Shown piece after piece: positions 29,318 to 61,025 of a DNA stretch of 64,000 bases. Position numbers and translations under genes: made by a program. Origin of the DNA: Octopus bimaculoides (lineage: Eukaryota); the NCBI RefSeq assembly GCF_001194135.2, contig NC_068992.1, forward strand, positions 22,280,298-22,344,297. Direction: 5' to 3'. Every line of letters starts with the position of its first letter. Positions within the stretch are counted from its first letter, which is position 1. The notes under the pieces were generated by a model. The model did not search any database, was not told where the DNA came from, and was given only the letters and a program-made list of their open reading frames with translations.

Positions 29318-30132
29318 NNNNNNNNNNNNNNNNNNNNNNNNNNNNNNNNNNNNNNNNNNNNNNNNNNNNNNNNNNNNNNNNNNNNNNNNNNNNNNNNNNN
29401 NNNNNNNNNNNNNNNNNNNNNNNNNNNNNNNNNNNNNNNNNNNNNNNNNNNNNNNNNNNNNNNNNNNNNNNNNNNNNNNNNNNNNNNNNNNNNNNNNNNN
29501 NNNNNNNNNNNNNNNNNNNNNNNNNNNNNNNNNNNNNNNNNNNNNNNNNNNNNNNNNNNNNNNNNNNNNNNNNNNNNNNNNNNNNNNNNNNNNNNNNNNN
29601 NNNNNNNNNNNNNNNNNNNNNNNNNNNNNNNNNNNNNNNNNNNNNNNNNNNNNNNNNNNNNNNNNNNNNNNNNNNNNNNNNNNNNNNNNNNNNNNNNNNN
29701 NNNNNNNNNNNNNNNNNNNNNNNNNNNNNNNNNNNNNNNNNCATGTGTATGTGCGTGCGTGTAAATGTGTATTTCTTTCTTTGTTTTCTTTCTTTTGTTT
29801 GTGGGTTAAACGTTTCTAGAAATTTTCTTTTTTTTTTTTCTTCTTCGAGCGGCATATCACAAACAATAATTAGTACTGGTTCAACTCACTATTAAACAAA
29901 GAATGTTTAACCAGTTCTATGTTCAAAATGTGTTGGTGGATTTGACTGAGAATGTAGAAGCATTTGACTTTTATGTTATCCCTGTCAGTATGTCTGCAGG
30001 CATACGCGAGATTACACATAAATCAATTTAAGGTATGTGTGTGTGTGTGTGTGTGCGTGTGTGTGTTTGTGTGTGTATTTGTGTATGCATGTGTGGTACA
30101 CGAAACTTGTTTATATTATTAACATTATTAAG

Positions 30133-30454
30133 AATACCTCCGCCTTTGCTATTGCGGAGGTATTGTTTTCAGTCGGGTTAGTTTCCAATGGATTCCGATG
30201 AAGCTTTCAGGGATGTTTGGCCTCGTGACTGGCACGAACAGATTAGATTTTGGAATCGATCCGGTCCTGGACAAAGATTCTGGATTATTTTCCTGTAATT
30301 TACTTAACTTTTGAGAGCGATCGGGTTCGTATTCTCGTTTGTGAGAGCAGTCAAGTTTATTTCAAATATTCTCATTTAAAAAATCATTTCCTGCTAATCG
30401 CTGGGAGAACGTTGATGTTGCCTTGACGGATGTTTGCGTTCTCTGAGTGCTCTT
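30133..30454 (+). mobile_element. HINE/DINE-1-like non-autonomous element
   Basis: 5' hairpin AATACCTCCGC-CTTTGCTATT-GCGGAGGTATT. The body is homologous to 9790-10166. The 3' end is CCTTGACGGATG..CTCTGAGTGCTCTT. Confidence 0.72.
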
Positions 30455-30458
30455 ATTA

Positions 30459-30521
30459 TTATTACCTCCGCTTTCGCTAAGGCGGAGGACATTAGTGTTA
30501 CCTTGGTGGAGTGCTCTTGTT
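30459..30521 (+). mobile_element. About 60-bp deletion derivative of the same HINE
   Basis: ATTACCTCCGCTTTCGCTAAGGCGGAGG (5' hairpin) is joined almost directly to CCTTGGTGGAGTGCTCTTGTT (3' end). Confidence 0.65.
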
Positions 30522-30621
30522 GAAAATGATTTCGAGTCATATACAAAAGTGAACCCAGGTAAATTTACGTCAATCGTTGACAAAGTTGATCATCGCTTCC
30601 TGGGCTGGCAGACATCATCTG

Positions 30622-30782
30622 TCTTCTTTCGGTCAATGAACTGCAGCCATGCTGGGGCACCGCGTTGCATGGTTTAATCGAACAAGTCGACCTCAGTAAT
30701 TGTTTACTCGTTTATCGAACCGATATGTTACAGGGGCATAAAGATACCACCACTCGTTGCTGTGGGATCAAACATAAACAAA
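30622..30782 (-). mobile_element. SINE group B 3' module, degraded
   Basis: GTCAATGAACTGCAGCCATGCTGGGGCACCGC..TCGAACAAGTCGACC..GAACCG..GTTACAGGGG. Confidence 0.7.
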
Positions 30783-31008
30783 AAAATGACATCTATGTGT
30801 GCGTGCAGGACATATACACACATGCACGCACGCACACACACACACACAGACAGATACACACACATCTATATATAATTGTCACTGAATGTAACTAAACGTG
30901 TTAGAACACCTACATTGCTAGAAATAAGAGCTAAAATGTTCTTATGCTGGAGTTAAAGCACATAAGTCTGTACATATATACTGACAGGGACCGTAATCCG
31001 CTGCAAAC

Positions 31009-31087
31009 ACCGGTCGAGAATTCCTTATATTCATCGGTCAATTTCGGATATTACGTAGCCTCATCAGTAAGGATCGCTCGATACGGC
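31009..31087 (-). ncRNA. Canonical type I hammerhead ribozyme
   Basis: Minus strand: gccg-ua-UCGAG-cga-UCCUUA-CUGAUGA-GGcUA-cguaa-UAuCC-GAA-AUUgA-ccga-UgAAU-A/UAAGGA-auu-CUCGA-c-cggu. All core nucleotides are present, with G10.1-C11.1, A15.1-U16.1 and an AUA cleavage triplet. Stems II and III each carry one mismatch. Confidence 0.85.
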
Positions 31088-32478
31088 TGATTCCGGACTT
31101 AATTCTCTATCAGTTCATCTATCAGTTACTGTTTTACTTGTTTCAGGCTCGTGGTAATTGTTATACCTGGCCAATACAAGTTCGAAGGACGTGAGAGTAG
31201 GACTAGCTCTGCACAAACTGTACCCACTATAATAATACTCAACGTGCGGGTTACTAACCAAACCCTGACGCCAGCAGCAACACCATCACACTCTCCGCGT
31301 ACGTCTAGTTACGATTGGGAAAGCGGTGCCGGGGATAGGTACAAGATGCTGCGAGAAATCTTCACCGTTGACCCTGCACACAGGTGACCATAGGGTGACA
31401 GTAATTTTAGCTGTGTCTTGCAGAGATTTCATTAGTGAAAGGATTTTTTGAGCATTCGTATTAAAAGAAGACTAAACAACAATACATATCTGTAGCAATG
31501 AACTATCTAGAATGTTGCATTTGTGTTTTGTACATAGTTGTTTTATCAACTTCTTAAGTGGTATACATCTGTATGAGCATAGATTTCTTGGGACTACATA
31601 GCGACAATAACAATAGCAGAAGCCGCACCAACACGAGCCAATGTTCTTTACACTATACTGCAATGATATTGTGACTCCACTCCCAATAGTTCCCGCATTA
31701 ACCACTTCTTTATATCCCAAATATACATTTTGAATTCTCTCTATCCGTGTGTTTTTTCCTACGACCGTAACCTCATACATGTTGGAAAAGAACATTTAAA
31801 CCGTGTTAAAACCAAGTCGATCTCATTGGTTTGGGTGAGCGTGTGATGGCCATTGGCAAGTACCTTTTCTTCCGGGCGAAATCTATAAAACGGAATTTAT
31901 TTATTGACTTATTATTTTCATTAATCCGCGACGAAATACAAACCTTTAGCTATTTACGATGCGTCAAAAAACTGAAATGGTATGACGAAAATACCAGGCA
32001 GTTTAGTAAAGTAAAACAATTTCAGTTACCATTTGAAATCGTATCATGGAAAACTTATGGCTTCCCAATTTCTCCGCATTTTTCTCCCTCTCTTTTGACA
32101 GACATTGCAACAATAATTTTCCACAGATTCAAAATAAACTTTCATTAAAAAGAGTAATCCATTTCCATAGCAACATATTAACAATACTTTATCGTTTGTC
32201 TTGATTTCTATATTGGATTTGACATTTGTTGTTAAAGTTAGAGTTATTTTTTTCTTTCCTTGATGCAAGAGTATTTGTTTTTCTTCATATTTTTAATCAA
32301 TGATTTCTAGTCAAATAAATTTTTCAAAATAAGAAAAAGAAAAATTAATTTAGATTTTAAATAGACACATATTGTAATATACTATTTTTGATATTCCTTT
32401 TTTTCTTTCTGATTGCTTTTGTATGTCATTTGGTATTTTATAAATACATACATATATACATATATACATACATACATG

Positions 32479-32554
<76 letters not shown>

Positions 32555-33389
32555 NNNNNNNNNNNNNNNNNNNNNNNNNNNNNNNNNNNNNNNNNNNNNN
32601 NNNNNNNNTATATATATATATATATATATATATCTTTGGATTTAATTTTGTAAAAAAAATTCAACAGAACAAGCAAAAGCAAGTGATAAAATATAATATT
32701 AAAAAACATTGAGGAAAATAAAACAAAAAATAATTTGAGTTATGATTTCTTTCAGATTTAATCTTTAAAAGAAAAAAATATATATAATGAAATGAGTGTT
32801 TTGTAGTCTTGTCAAGCCAGTGTGATTGCTATTGGCTATTATCAATCAGATGTATTATTAAGCAGACACATATATGTCCCTGCTGGCCTATCATACAACA
32901 GCTCAAGTATTATTTCTTTCTATTAACTTTCCTTTTCAGAATGTGCATATAAAAATAACCATATTGATGGTCGACCATTTTCTATTGAATGTATTGGGAC
33001 GCAAAAGTATTATAAGATAAATCCAATATTTATATATTATAGAATAATAAACCATTAAAATGATCGAGGAATCATAGAAAAATGGTACTGCGTTAAGCAC
33101 TTTACTTTCGATTAATGATGCTTATATAACACATACAACTAGAACATTATGTCAATTTTCTTTAATGAAAATCTGTGGTGTTGTGGGATGACATAAGTGC
33201 GTCAGACAAAAGAGTGATGACAAAATAGTGTGGACAAAACAGTGAAGAACGAATGAACACCAATACGAAAGACAAAAGAGCAAATGACAGCAAAGAGCAC
33301 ATTTTAAAATATGATGTTTCATATTCTAAAATTATTTCGTTTTGTAGGTTTGTTGTTAAGCTGAGATAATAACATTTGGTCCTCATTGA

Positions 33390-46967: not shown

Positions 46968-47335
46968 GTACCAGCATTGCTGTGTGCTAAGTAGTTCACT
47001 TCCCAACCGCATGATTCCGTGTTCAGTCCCGCTGCGCGGCATGTTGGGCAAGTGTCATTTGCTATAGCCTCGGGCCGACCAAATCCTCGTGAGTGGATTT
47101 GCTTGACGGAAACTGAATGAGGGACGTCGTGTGTATTTTTGTGTCTGTGTTTGTGCCTCCATCCTTGCTTGACAACCAGTGTTGGTGCATTTATGTCCCC
47201 ATAACTTAGCAGTTCAGCAAAACAGAACGATTGAATAAGTCATGGGGTTGACTTGTTCGAGTAACATTCTTCAAAGATGTGCTTTCAGCATGGCCGCAGT
47301 CAAATGACTGAAACAAGTAAAACAATAAAAGAATT
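46968..47335 (+). mobile_element. SINE group B, complete composite
   Basis: The head (GTTCAGTCCCGCTGCGCGGCATGTTGGGCAAGTGTC..CTCGGGCCGACC) is directly followed by the 3' module, which ends GACTGAAACAAGTAAAAC. Confidence 0.88.
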
Positions 47336-47354
47336 TTATATACATATGTACGTG

Positions 47355-48167: not shown

Positions 48168-48560
48168 ACGGGAGTATCTGTATGGTAAGAAGTTTGCTTC
48201 GCAATCACATGGTTCCAGGTTCAGTTTCACTACGTGGCACCTTGGGCAAATATCTTCTACTATAGCCTCAGGCCGATAAAAAGCTTGAGTGGATTTGGTA
48301 GACGGAAACTGAAAGAAGCCCGTCGTATATATATAAATATATATATATATATATTTGTGTGCCTGTATTTGTCCCCCACCATCGCTTGACAGCCGATGTT
48401 GGTGTGTTTACGTTCCCTCAAATTAACAGTTTGACAAAAGAGGCCGATAGAATAAGTACTAGGCTTAAAAGGAATAAGTCTTGGAGTCGACTAAAGGCGG
48501 TGCTCCAGCATAGCCGCCGTCAAATGACTGAAACAAGTCAAAGAATAGAAAATAAAAAAA
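48168..48560 (+). mobile_element. SINE group B, complete composite
   Basis: Head, short (TA)n linker and 3' module ending CAAATGACTGAAACAAG. Confidence 0.9.
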
Positions 48561-60060: not shown

Positions 60061-60584
60061 GCAAGTATACATGGGTGTGTATGTATATGTGTATGCAAAT
60101 ATGTACGCATATGTATGTATTGGGACACTCTATATTTCAGTAAATGTAGGCAGTCACTTCTTTTTCCAGGGGAATTGGTACATAAAATGAAATGATCTTG
60201 GCGACAAAGTCACATCTAGAAATTGCGAATTTTATCTACTTCCCATCTATGCACATTAAAGCGAGTAGAATAATTTAACTCGCCTGAGGAGATAATTAAT
60301 GTATATGACAACATTTGATCTTGTAATCTGTGACTCAGAATTACTGTAACTTTCTCATTCAGGCACAAAATTGTGCAGCTATTTTTCTTAATTAGGTGTA
60401 GTTTTCGTTTAATTAGAAGTAGTTCTGTTGATTATTCTGTTGTTTCATTTTTCTGTATTTCACTGGCAAGATTCCTGATATGAACTTGTGTGCTGAAGTG
60501 CGTGTGTTTTTATTGACTTAATGAACCGCCCGAGATTCAAGGAATTCTGCTGTTTATTTGTACATATAGGGACAGATGATGTCG

Positions 60585-60732
60585 TGTGATAAGAAGCTTG
60601 CATTCTAATTACATGGTTCCAGTTTCAATCTCACTGCGTGGCACTTTAGGCAGATGTTTTCTACCATAGCCTCTAGTCGACCAAAGCCTTGTGAGTGGAT
60701 TTGGTGAACGGAAACTGGAAGAAACCCATCGT

Positions 60733-60775
<43 letters not shown>

Positions 60776-61025
60776 CTTCAAGGCGGTGCACCATCATGGC
60801 TGCAGTCTAATGACTGAAATAATCCTCAGCCACTGCTTCACAACCGGCTTTGTTGTTTTTAATGTCCCCGTAATATAGCGGTTCGGCAAAACAGACCGAT
60901 AGACTATGTAGCAGTCTTAAAATAAAATAGAAAGGGAATCGTTTCATTCTACTAACAAGTCTTGAAGGCGGTGCACCAGCATGGCCGCAGTCTAATGACA
61001 GAAACAAAATAGATAAACGATAAAA
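60585..61025 (+). mobile_element. SINE group B with an extra tail fragment between the modules
   Basis: Head at 60590-60735, then (TA)n, a tail fragment AAGGCGGTGCACCATCATGGCTGCAGTCTAATGACTGAAA at about 60780-60820, and the full 3' module. Confidence 0.82.

What the first reader, a model, noticed from the sequence alone, without database searches (positions are those of the whole stretch)
31009..31087. Canonical type I hammerhead ribozyme with an extended, internally looped stem I
Seen on the minus strand: stem Ia UCCUUA/UAAGGA (6 perfect bp) and core CUGAUGA. Stem II is GG(C)UA/UA(U)CC with loop CGUAA, followed by GAA. Stem III is AUU(G)A/U(G)AAU with loop CCGA. The triplet is AUA, predicting cleavage between plus positions 31028 and 31027. 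Beyond stem Ia there is a 3x3 internal loop (CGA/AUU), stem Ib UCGAG/CUCGA (5 perfect bp) and a further GCCG/CGGU helix. Every invariant core nucleotide is present, and the single mismatches in stems II and III are each one substitution from pairing. Established: a stem I internal loop about 6 bp from the core docks with loop II in fast natural hammerheads (for example Schistosoma Sm-alpha). Canonical type I motifs in animals occur in satellite or retrozyme repeats that yield small circular RNAs. Inference: this is a slightly decayed copy of a ribozyme-bearing mobile RNA family in a cephalopod-like genome, which to my knowledge is not well described.
Basis: partly seen in the sequence, partly recalled or inferred. 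Interest (0 to 1): 0.85.

Follow-up and report, generated by a model that had tools for sequence, protein, structure and literature searches.

The report
Lone imperfect type I hammerhead motif
The minus strand at 31087-31009 carries a complete hammerhead self-cleaving ribozyme motif that chance is unlikely to produce in one window, but it is a single imperfect copy of a ribozyme class already known to be common in animal genomes, and no relatives could be found to show that it works.

Summary
Minus strand 31087-31009 reads helix I (4+5+6 bp with a 3x3 internal loop), CUGAUGA, helix II (GGCUA/UAUCC with one C.U), GAA, helix III (AUUGA/UGAAU with one G.G), then A17. The predicted cut is at 31028|31027.

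It is more than chance at window level. It is the only hit to my descriptors. There were 0 hits in 1200 shuffles, 0.0021 hits per random window for a generous descriptor, and 0 hits for 539 decoy cores. A covariance model built only from four validated coral, mussel and axolotl type I hammerheads ranks it first (22.3 bits, E about 3e-4; next hit 11.8 bits).

Against it:
- No Rfam hammerhead model reports it, even at E<=10 on 96 nt.
- Helix II is interrupted.
- There is no second copy, tandem array, target-site duplication, reverse transcriptase ORF or SINE homology around it.
- No homologue was found, so covariation is untested.

Best reading (about 0.6): a solitary copy of a hammerhead-bearing retroelement of the retrozyme or Penelope kind, with activity uncertain and probably reduced. 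Chance remains plausible (about 0.27) across a whole genome or many scanned windows.

Type I hammerheads are already recorded in molluscs and cephalopods. I rate it a new member of a known kind, of modest interest.

The parts
31068..31087 (-). 5' strand of helix I: distal GCCG (31087-31084), UA bulge, helix Ib UCGAG (31081-31077), internal loop CGA (31076-31074), helix Ia UCCUUA (31073-31068)
   Evidence: Read directly. The parse was checked by script, and pair probabilities are 0.81-1.00 for all 15 helix I pairs.
31061..31067 (-). Conserved core, first strand: C3 U4 G5 A6 U7 G8 A9 (CUGAUGA)
   Evidence: It aligns to the core of model R1.
31046..31060 (-). Helix II with loop: GGCUA / CGUAA / UAUCC. 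The pairs are G-C, G-C, C.U (mismatch at 10.3/11.3), U-A, A-U.
   Evidence: The mismatch is marked 'v' in the R1 alignment. The nearest-neighbour pair probability is about 0.02, but the validated mussel ribozyme scores 0.03.
31043..31045 (-). Conserved core, second strand: G12 A13 A14 (GAA)
31029..31042 (-). Helix III with loop: AUUGA / CCGA / UGAAU. The pairs are A15.1-U16.1, U-A, U-A, G.G (mismatch), A-U.
   Evidence: The three intact proximal pairs equal the helix III length of the four validated ribozymes (alignment A2).
31027..31028 (-). Predicted self-cleavage site: after A17 (31028), before U1.1 (31027). The triplet is AUA.
   Evidence: The position follows from the hammerhead numbering applied to the parse. 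Cleavage itself was not tested.
31009..31027 (-). 3' strand of helix I: UAAGGA (31027-31022), internal loop AUU (31021-31019), CUCGA (31018-31014), C bulge (31013), CGGU (31012-31009)
   Evidence: An extension of at least 5 Watson-Crick pairs occurs at 4.6% of random places in the window.

Best explanation
This is a solitary genomic copy of a type I hammerhead ribozyme. It most likely descends from a hammerhead-bearing retroelement, either a non-LTR retrozyme monomer or a relative of Penelope-like elements.

Mechanism (inferred from the hammerhead family, not shown here). If the minus strand is transcribed, the long interrupted helix I closes the three-way junction. The core then cuts the chain after A17 (31028|31027), leaving a 2',3'-cyclic phosphate and a 5'-OH. 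G12 acts as the general base and the G8 2'-OH as the general acid. In the parent element, two such cuts in a multimeric transcript release a monomer. A tRNA ligase circularises the monomer, and it is then reverse-transcribed. Here there is only one site, so a cut would merely sever the host transcript.

The C.U interruption in helix II and the all-A/U helix III probably lower the rate, and the copy may be dead.

Shown: the motif, its statistical non-randomness and its match to validated animal hammerheads. Inferred: descent from a mobile family, and any activity.
For: - The core is complete and the parse is exact.
- It is the only descriptor hit in the window.
- There were 0 hits in 1200 shuffles, 0.0021 hits per random window and 0 hits for 539 decoys.
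- The helix I extension has P = 0.046-0.17.
- Model R1 was built only from four validated coral, mussel and axolotl retrozyme hammerheads. It ranks this site first at 22.3 bits and E 3.1e-4; the next hit scores 11.8 bits.
- The catalytic-centre rule CUGANGA/GAAAY/RUH of the retrozyme authors is met.
- The 6-bp helix Ia, internal loop and 5-bp helix Ib match the validated coral ribozyme (my reading of the sequence).
- The three intact helix III pairs equal the length seen in validated examples.
- Literature base rates: about 5000 type I copies in a mussel (PMC7229834); 235 hammerhead 1 loci in the giant squid (PMC6962438); monomeric retrozyme derivatives are a recognised class (bioRxiv 10.64898/2026.07.22.740005).
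Against: - No Rfam hammerhead model reports it, even at E<=10 on 96 nt.
- Helix II is interrupted, and helices II and III have pair probabilities of about 0.02. The hammerhead fold scores -11.7 kcal/mol against an MFE of -16.0. Validated ribozymes look equally poor by this measure, so this argument is weak.
- There is no other copy in the window, no tandem array and no target-site duplication.
- There is no Pfam domain in the open frames tested between 29870 and 32292, which lie in the gap-free 2.8-kb stretch.
- There is no SINE homology over the motif.
- The 88-nt and 295-nt folds are no more stable than shuffles (z = 0.18 and -0.30).
- No homologue was found anywhere I could search, so there is no covariation evidence.
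Confidence: 0.6

Rival explanations
1. Chance look-alike. An A/T-rich, repeat-rich genome of gigabase size throws up a few sequences that satisfy a relaxed hammerhead descriptor. This is one of them, noticed because many windows were read.
For: - The generous descriptor hits 0.0021 times per 56.5-kb window. That is about one hit per 27 Mb, or on the order of 100 in a genome of 2-3 Gb.
- Even with the helix I extension factor, several chance hits per genome are expected.
- No Rfam hammerhead family reports it.
- Helices II and III are both imperfect, and helix III is A/U-only.
- Overall folding is no better than shuffles.
- There are no paralogues, no repeat context and no homologues.
- The review PMC6155905 warns that relaxed hammerhead searches mostly gave false positives.
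Against: - Window-level probability is low by four separate estimates.
- A model that never saw this sequence ranks it first, by more than 10 bits.
- The architecture beyond the descriptor (6-bp helix Ia, internal loop, 5-bp helix Ib, and a 5-nt loop II whose last nucleotide is A) is that of validated animal type I ribozymes.
- True type I motifs are at least as dense as chance hits in the one cephalopod genome with a published count, at 235 loci.
Confidence: 0.27
2. An active, host-retained single-copy ribozyme, as with the conserved intronic hammerheads of amniotes. It would cut a host transcript in cis and be kept by selection rather than being a transposon relic.
For: - It is single-copy in the window, with no transposon hallmarks around it.
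- The core is fully intact, and 23 of 25 helix pairs are intact. This would be unexpected for an old neutral relic.
- Validated active ribozymes also look weak thermodynamically.
Against: - There is no evidence of conservation, because no orthologue was available.
- The Rfam HH9 and HH10 models give no match.
- The gene context is unknown.
- A mismatch in the middle of helix II is not what selection for activity would keep.
Confidence: 0.08

Closest known systems
Canonical type I hammerheads of metazoan non-LTR retrozymes (coral Amil224, mussel Mg353, axolotl Ax353 and Ax330; PMC7229834)
   Same: - Same core and type I topology.
- 6-bp helix Ia followed by an internal loop and a second helix.
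- Helix II of 4-5 pairs with a 5-nt loop, and a short helix III.
- Low G+C.
- Best hit in the window to a model built from these four sequences (22.3 bits).
   Different: - Not in a tandem repeat, and no second hammerhead nearby.
- C.U inside helix II.
- Helix III is AUU.../...AAU with an AUA site. All four models have AC.../...GU, three with GUC and one (Ax353) with GUA.
- Position 1.7 is A, not U as in the coral and both axolotl sequences.
- Helix III is not palindromic.
Minimal hammerheads in the pseudo-LTRs of Penelope-like elements (PMC8557442; PMC6155905)
   Same: - Type I hammerhead tied to a retroelement of invertebrates.
- Penelope-like elements are present in cephalopod genomes.
   Different: - The hammerheads of Penelope-like elements lack helix III and the loop-loop architecture. 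This one has both.
- No reverse transcriptase or GIY-YIG ORF lies within the gap-free stretch.
- A minimal descriptor of this kind found nothing in the window.
Schistosoma Sm-alpha hammerhead (SINE-like element; PMC6155905)
   Same: Type I hammerhead with an internally looped helix I, carried by a short non-autonomous retroelement.
   Different: - The motif here is not part of the SINE family of this window. Head and body profile HMMs do not reach it.
- No Rfam Hammerhead_1 match.
Rfam Hammerhead_1 loci counted in the giant squid genome (235 loci; PMC6962438)
   Different: - Those loci passed the Rfam model. This one does not.
- The origin of the window is unverified.

Membership tests
Hammerhead ribozyme, type I | Conserved catalytic centre CUGANGA / GAAA(Y) / (R)UH, with A15.1-U16.1 paired | tested here: met
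   CUGAUGA at 31067-31061, GAAAU at 31045-31041, AUA ending at 31028. The rule is quoted from the suppl. legend S1 of PMC7229834.
Hammerhead ribozyme, type I | Three helices around the core, with helix I open-ended | tested here: inconclusive
   - Helix I has 15 pairs and is perfect where paired.
- Helix II has 4 of 5 pairs, with an internal C.U.
- Helix III has 3 pairs, then G.G, then 1 pair.
- The motif fails the 'perfect helix topology' filter of PMC7229834. One validated ribozyme (Ax353) also lacks a standard 10.1-11.1 pair.
Hammerhead ribozyme, type I | Reaches the curated score of an Rfam hammerhead model (Hammerhead_1, _3, _II, HH9, HH10) | tested here: not met
   No match at gathering score in the window. 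None at E<=10 on 501 nt or 96 nt. The RAGATH-1 hammerhead model gives only 16.8 bits against 56.3.
Hammerhead ribozyme, type I | Significant match to a model of validated animal type I ribozymes that did not include it | tested here: met
   Model R1 gives 22.3 bits and E 3.1e-4 (rough calibration). It is the top hit of 128 kb searched with filters off; the next hit scores 11.8 bits.
Hammerhead ribozyme, type I | Compensatory changes in the helices among homologues | not testable with these tools
   No homologue was obtained: window self-search, protein-frame searches, metagenome pattern scan and exact-ORF look-ups.
Hammerhead ribozyme, type I | Site-specific self-cleavage | not testable with these tools
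   This needs an in vitro transcription assay. Thermodynamic prediction does not discriminate: the validated mussel ribozyme has a helix II probability of 0.03, and helix III is 0 in all four.
Metazoan non-LTR retrozyme | Tandem repeats of about 150-450 bp with at least two consecutive hammerheads | tested here: not met
   No second copy in the window (blastn with word size 7). No tandem repeat other than microsatellites between 29742 and 32554. No flanking direct repeat. A monomeric derivative remains possible.
Metazoan non-LTR retrozyme | Monomer RNA that is compact and highly self-paired | tested here: not met
   The 295-nt fold around the motif has z = -0.30 against shuffles. The element borders are unknown, so the test is weak.
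Penelope-like element pseudo-LTR hammerhead | Minimal hammerhead without helix III or loop contacts, next to a reverse transcriptase plus GIY-YIG ORF | tested here: not met
   Helix III and the helix I internal loop are present. There is no Pfam domain in the open frames tested between 29870 and 32292. Assembly gaps at 29318-29741 and 32555-32608 limit the reach of this test.
SINE-borne hammerhead (Sm-alpha type) | The hammerhead lies inside a SINE unit | tested here: not met
   Profile HMMs of the head and body of the window's SINE family hit at least 10 copies but not 30876-31110. The nearest is a 5'-truncated body at 30759-30617. Smith-Waterman scores are at the null level.

The most novel reading that the evidence does not exclude
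The motif is the first sighted member of an undescribed hammerhead lineage in this probably cephalopod genome. One version is a retrozyme-like circular-RNA family with an unusually long helix I and an AUA site. The other is a single-copy ribozyme retained by the host. In either version it would still self-cleave despite the helix II mismatch.
Probability: 0.12. Interest if true: 0.5.

Novelty: new member of a known kind. Interest (0 to 1): 0.3.

Why it matters
If it is real and part of a family, it adds a mollusc or cephalopod lineage to the hammerhead-bearing retroelements that make small circular RNAs in animals. It would also give a natural variant (AUA site, long helix I, interrupted helix II) for asking how much helix II damage a full-length type I ribozyme tolerates. 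If it is a lone relic or a chance match, it matters only as a calibration point. A relaxed hammerhead descriptor hits about once per 27 Mb of such sequence by chance, so single hits need family or cleavage evidence.

Tried and rejected
- **Rfam at three scales**: no hammerhead family. The mir-466 and mir-297 matches at 30800-30855 are (TG)n microsatellite artefacts.
- **Thermodynamics as a test of activity:** rejected, because validated ribozymes score as badly as the candidate.
- **Second copies in the window:** blastn with word sizes 7 and 9 found none.
- **The other nine CTGANGA...GAAA sites:** none has helices.
- **SINE origin:** MAFFT put the motif opposite the SINE head. Smith-Waterman against shuffles and nhmmer profiles show no homology. 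The 21-nt SINE-tail-like stretch at 31146-31126 is not significant under the profile (E 8.2).
- **Penelope-like element context:** no Pfam domain in individual ORFs, nor in the open frames tested between 29870 and 32292. One search failed on stop codons.
- **Homologues through translated frames:** nothing with the 51-aa frame. The 65-aa frame gave only artefacts from internally repetitive proteins.
- **Metagenome pattern scan:** three unrelated microbial coding sequences without a hammerhead fold.
- **Organism identification:** exact-ORF look-ups found nothing. The transposase-like ORF found one 629-nt ENA contig, which gave no organism.
- **Target-site duplications and tandem structure:** none (one search was a usage error).
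- **One long shuffle run timed out** and was replaced by Markov windows.

Full report
**1. The observation**

GCCG-UA-UCGAG-CGA-UCCUUA | CUGAUGA | GGCUA-CGUAA-UAUCC | GAA | AUUGA-CCGA-UGAAU | A | UAAGGA-AUU-CUCGA-C-CGGU

- All invariant hammerhead positions are present: C3 U4 G5 A6 G8 A9, G12 A13 A14, A15.1-U16.1 and H17 = A.
- The cut would fall between 31028 and 31027.
- Helix I has 15 pairs in three blocks (6, 5 and 4). The blocks are separated by a 3x3 internal loop and a UA/C bulge.
- Helix II has an internal C.U, and helix III an internal G.G.

**2. Is it more than chance?**

I wrote a type I descriptor scan. This site is the only hit in the window at several stringencies. A minimal descriptor of the Penelope-element kind finds nothing.

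| Test | Result |
|---|---|
| Dinucleotide shuffles; helix I >=5 bp, helices II and III 5 pairs with at most 1 mismatch | 0 hits in 1200 |
| Generous descriptor (6/5/5 pairs, at most 1 mismatch per helix, at most 2 in all) on first-order Markov windows | 78 hits in 37072, or 0.0021 per window |
| 539 decoy cores of the same base composition on the real sequence | 0 hits, against 1 for the true core |
| Helix I extension of at least 5 pairs after an internal loop, at random places in the window | 4.6% Watson-Crick only, 17% with G.U |

The generous descriptor was used to offset the fact that it was designed after seeing the site.

For a test that owes nothing to this sequence, I took four experimentally validated animal type I hammerheads from suppl. 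Table 2 of PMC7229834: coral Amil224, mussel Mg353, and axolotl Ax353 and Ax330. I aligned them (A2), built a covariance model with the hammerhead structure (R1) and searched the whole window with filters off. The site is the top hit at 31073-31022 (-), with 22.3 bits and E 3.1e-4. The next hit scores 11.8 bits (E 0.46).

So at the level of one window the motif is not a chance product. However, 0.0021 per window is about one chance hit per 27 Mb. Chance hits are therefore expected somewhere in a large genome or a long scan.

**3. What speaks against a working ribozyme**

- Rfam gives no hammerhead family at gathering score in the window. It gives none at E<=10 on 501 nt or 96 nt either. Only the RAGATH-1 hammerhead model aligns the core locally, at 16.8 bits against a threshold of 56.3.
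- In the nearest-neighbour model, helix I is near-certain (P 0.81-1.00), but helices II and III have P about 0.02. The hammerhead fold scores -11.7 kcal/mol against an MFE of -16.0.
- The 88-nt and 295-nt folds are no more stable than shuffles (z = 0.18 and -0.30).

I checked how much the thermodynamic argument is worth. The same calculation on the four validated ribozymes gives helix III P = 0 in all four, and helix II P = 0.03 for the mussel ribozyme. The paper reports efficient self-cleavage for hammerheads of most invertebrate retrozymes (abstract of PMC7229834). Thermodynamics therefore does not discriminate.

The real defect is the C.U in the middle of helix II. The three intact proximal pairs of helix III equal the helix III length of the validated examples.

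**4. Context**

- The window is an A/T-rich draft with 22 runs of N, many microsatellites and a SINE family.
- The motif lies in a gap-free stretch, 29742-32554.
- It has no second copy in the window, no tandem repeat other than microsatellites and no flanking direct repeat.
- There is no Pfam domain in the open frames tested between 29870 and 32292.
- Profile HMMs built from the in-window SINE copies find at least 10 heads and at least 12 bodies. None covers 30876-31110.
- A 5'-truncated SINE body sits downstream on the same strand at 30759-30617 (E 5.5e-19).
- A 21-nt SINE-tail-like stretch at 31146-31126 is not significant under the profile.

**5. Homologues**

None could be obtained.
- Translated-frame searches over the motif found nothing, or only artefacts from internally repetitive proteins.
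- A degenerate pattern scan of metagenome contigs returned three microbial coding sequences without a hammerhead fold.
- Exact-ORF look-ups found nothing.

The organism also stays unverified.

**6. Comparison with what is known**

- Type I hammerheads are widespread in animal genomes. They sit mostly in tandem non-LTR retrozymes that give circular RNAs of 170-400 nt. A mussel has about 5000 copies (PMC7229834).
- Monomeric derivatives are a recognised class (bioRxiv 10.64898/2026.07.22.740005).
- Penelope-like elements carry minimal hammerheads without helix III (PMC6155905; PMC8557442). These elements are present in octopus and squid genomes.
- The giant squid genome paper already lists 235 Rfam hammerhead 1 loci (PMC6962438).

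The present motif has the architecture of the retrozyme type: a 6-bp helix Ia, an internal loop, a 5-bp helix Ib and a 5-nt loop II ending in A. It meets the CUGANGA/GAAAY/RUH rule. It fails the tandem-repeat criterion, the perfect-helix criterion and the Rfam models. It is not of the Penelope-element minimal type and is not SINE-borne.

**7. Verdict**

| Reading | Confidence |
|---|---|
| Solitary copy derived from a hammerhead-bearing retroelement, activity uncertain and probably reduced | about 0.6 |
| Chance look-alike | about 0.27 |
| Host-retained active ribozyme | about 0.08 |

With 23 of 25 helix pairs and the whole core intact, a relic would have to be young, or the mismatches native to its family. 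That predicts that related copies should be easy to find in the source genome, and this is the decisive test.

The finding is a plausible new member of a well-known kind. It is not a new kind, and its interest is modest until a family or cleavage is shown.

Noticed in passing
window 46974-47338 (+), 48177-48558 (+), 34768-34287 (-), 60582-61019 (+) and at least 8 partial copies: There is a SINE family of about 400 nt. It has a 163-nt head, an internal (TA/TG)n microsatellite and a body of about 230 nt ending ...CAGCATGGCCGCAGTCAAATGACTGAAACAAGTAAAAGAATAAAAGAA. Profile HMMs give at least 10 head hits and at least 12 body hits in 56.5 kb.
   Followed up: partly
window 22710-22754 (-): This is a sub-threshold hammerhead-like stretch: CUAAUGA (the core with G5 changed to A), then 14 nt, then GAAACACGUGUC. 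It scores 9.1 bits with model R1 (E 3). Helix II is absent and a direct repeat TTGAGCTA lies inside it, so it is probably chance.
   Followed up: partly
whole window: The pattern CTGANGA-N(8-38)-GAAA occurs 10 times against 2.3 expected, and 0 of 100 shuffles reach 10. Apart from the finding, none has hammerhead helices. The excess is unexplained and may reflect local composition that a whole-window shuffle does not keep.
   Followed up: partly
window 14925-15335 (-): A 136-aa ORF looks like part of a transposase (my recollection of similar sequences, not tested). It has no Pfam match. Its only database relative is a 101-aa product at 63% identity on a 629-nt contig of ENA assembly ERZ27234783.
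   Followed up: partly
window 18396-18418 (+) and 21272-21294 (+): Both sites gave the same score (8.6 bits) and the same model positions with R1. The alignment shown for the first reads GATCAATGGGTCGAAACGGTCGT. They lie about 2.9 kb apart. Weak SINE-body hits lie nearby at 18298-18258 and 21174-21135, so this may be a duplicated repeat unit.
   Followed up: no
window 30188-30465 vs 10074-9782: An interspersed repeat of about 290 nt at 77% identity, in opposite orientation. It is unrelated to the hammerhead.
   Followed up: no
window 30800-30855: The Rfam mir-466 and mir-297 matches here (about 30 bits, far below their thresholds of 85-90) are caused by a (TG)n microsatellite, not by microRNA genes.
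   Followed up: yes
whole window: There are 22 runs of N (7490 bases in all), G+C is 22-40% per 4 kb, and di- and tetranucleotide microsatellites are dense. This is a draft, gap-ridden eukaryotic assembly, so anything within a few hundred bases of a gap may be incomplete.
   Followed up: yes
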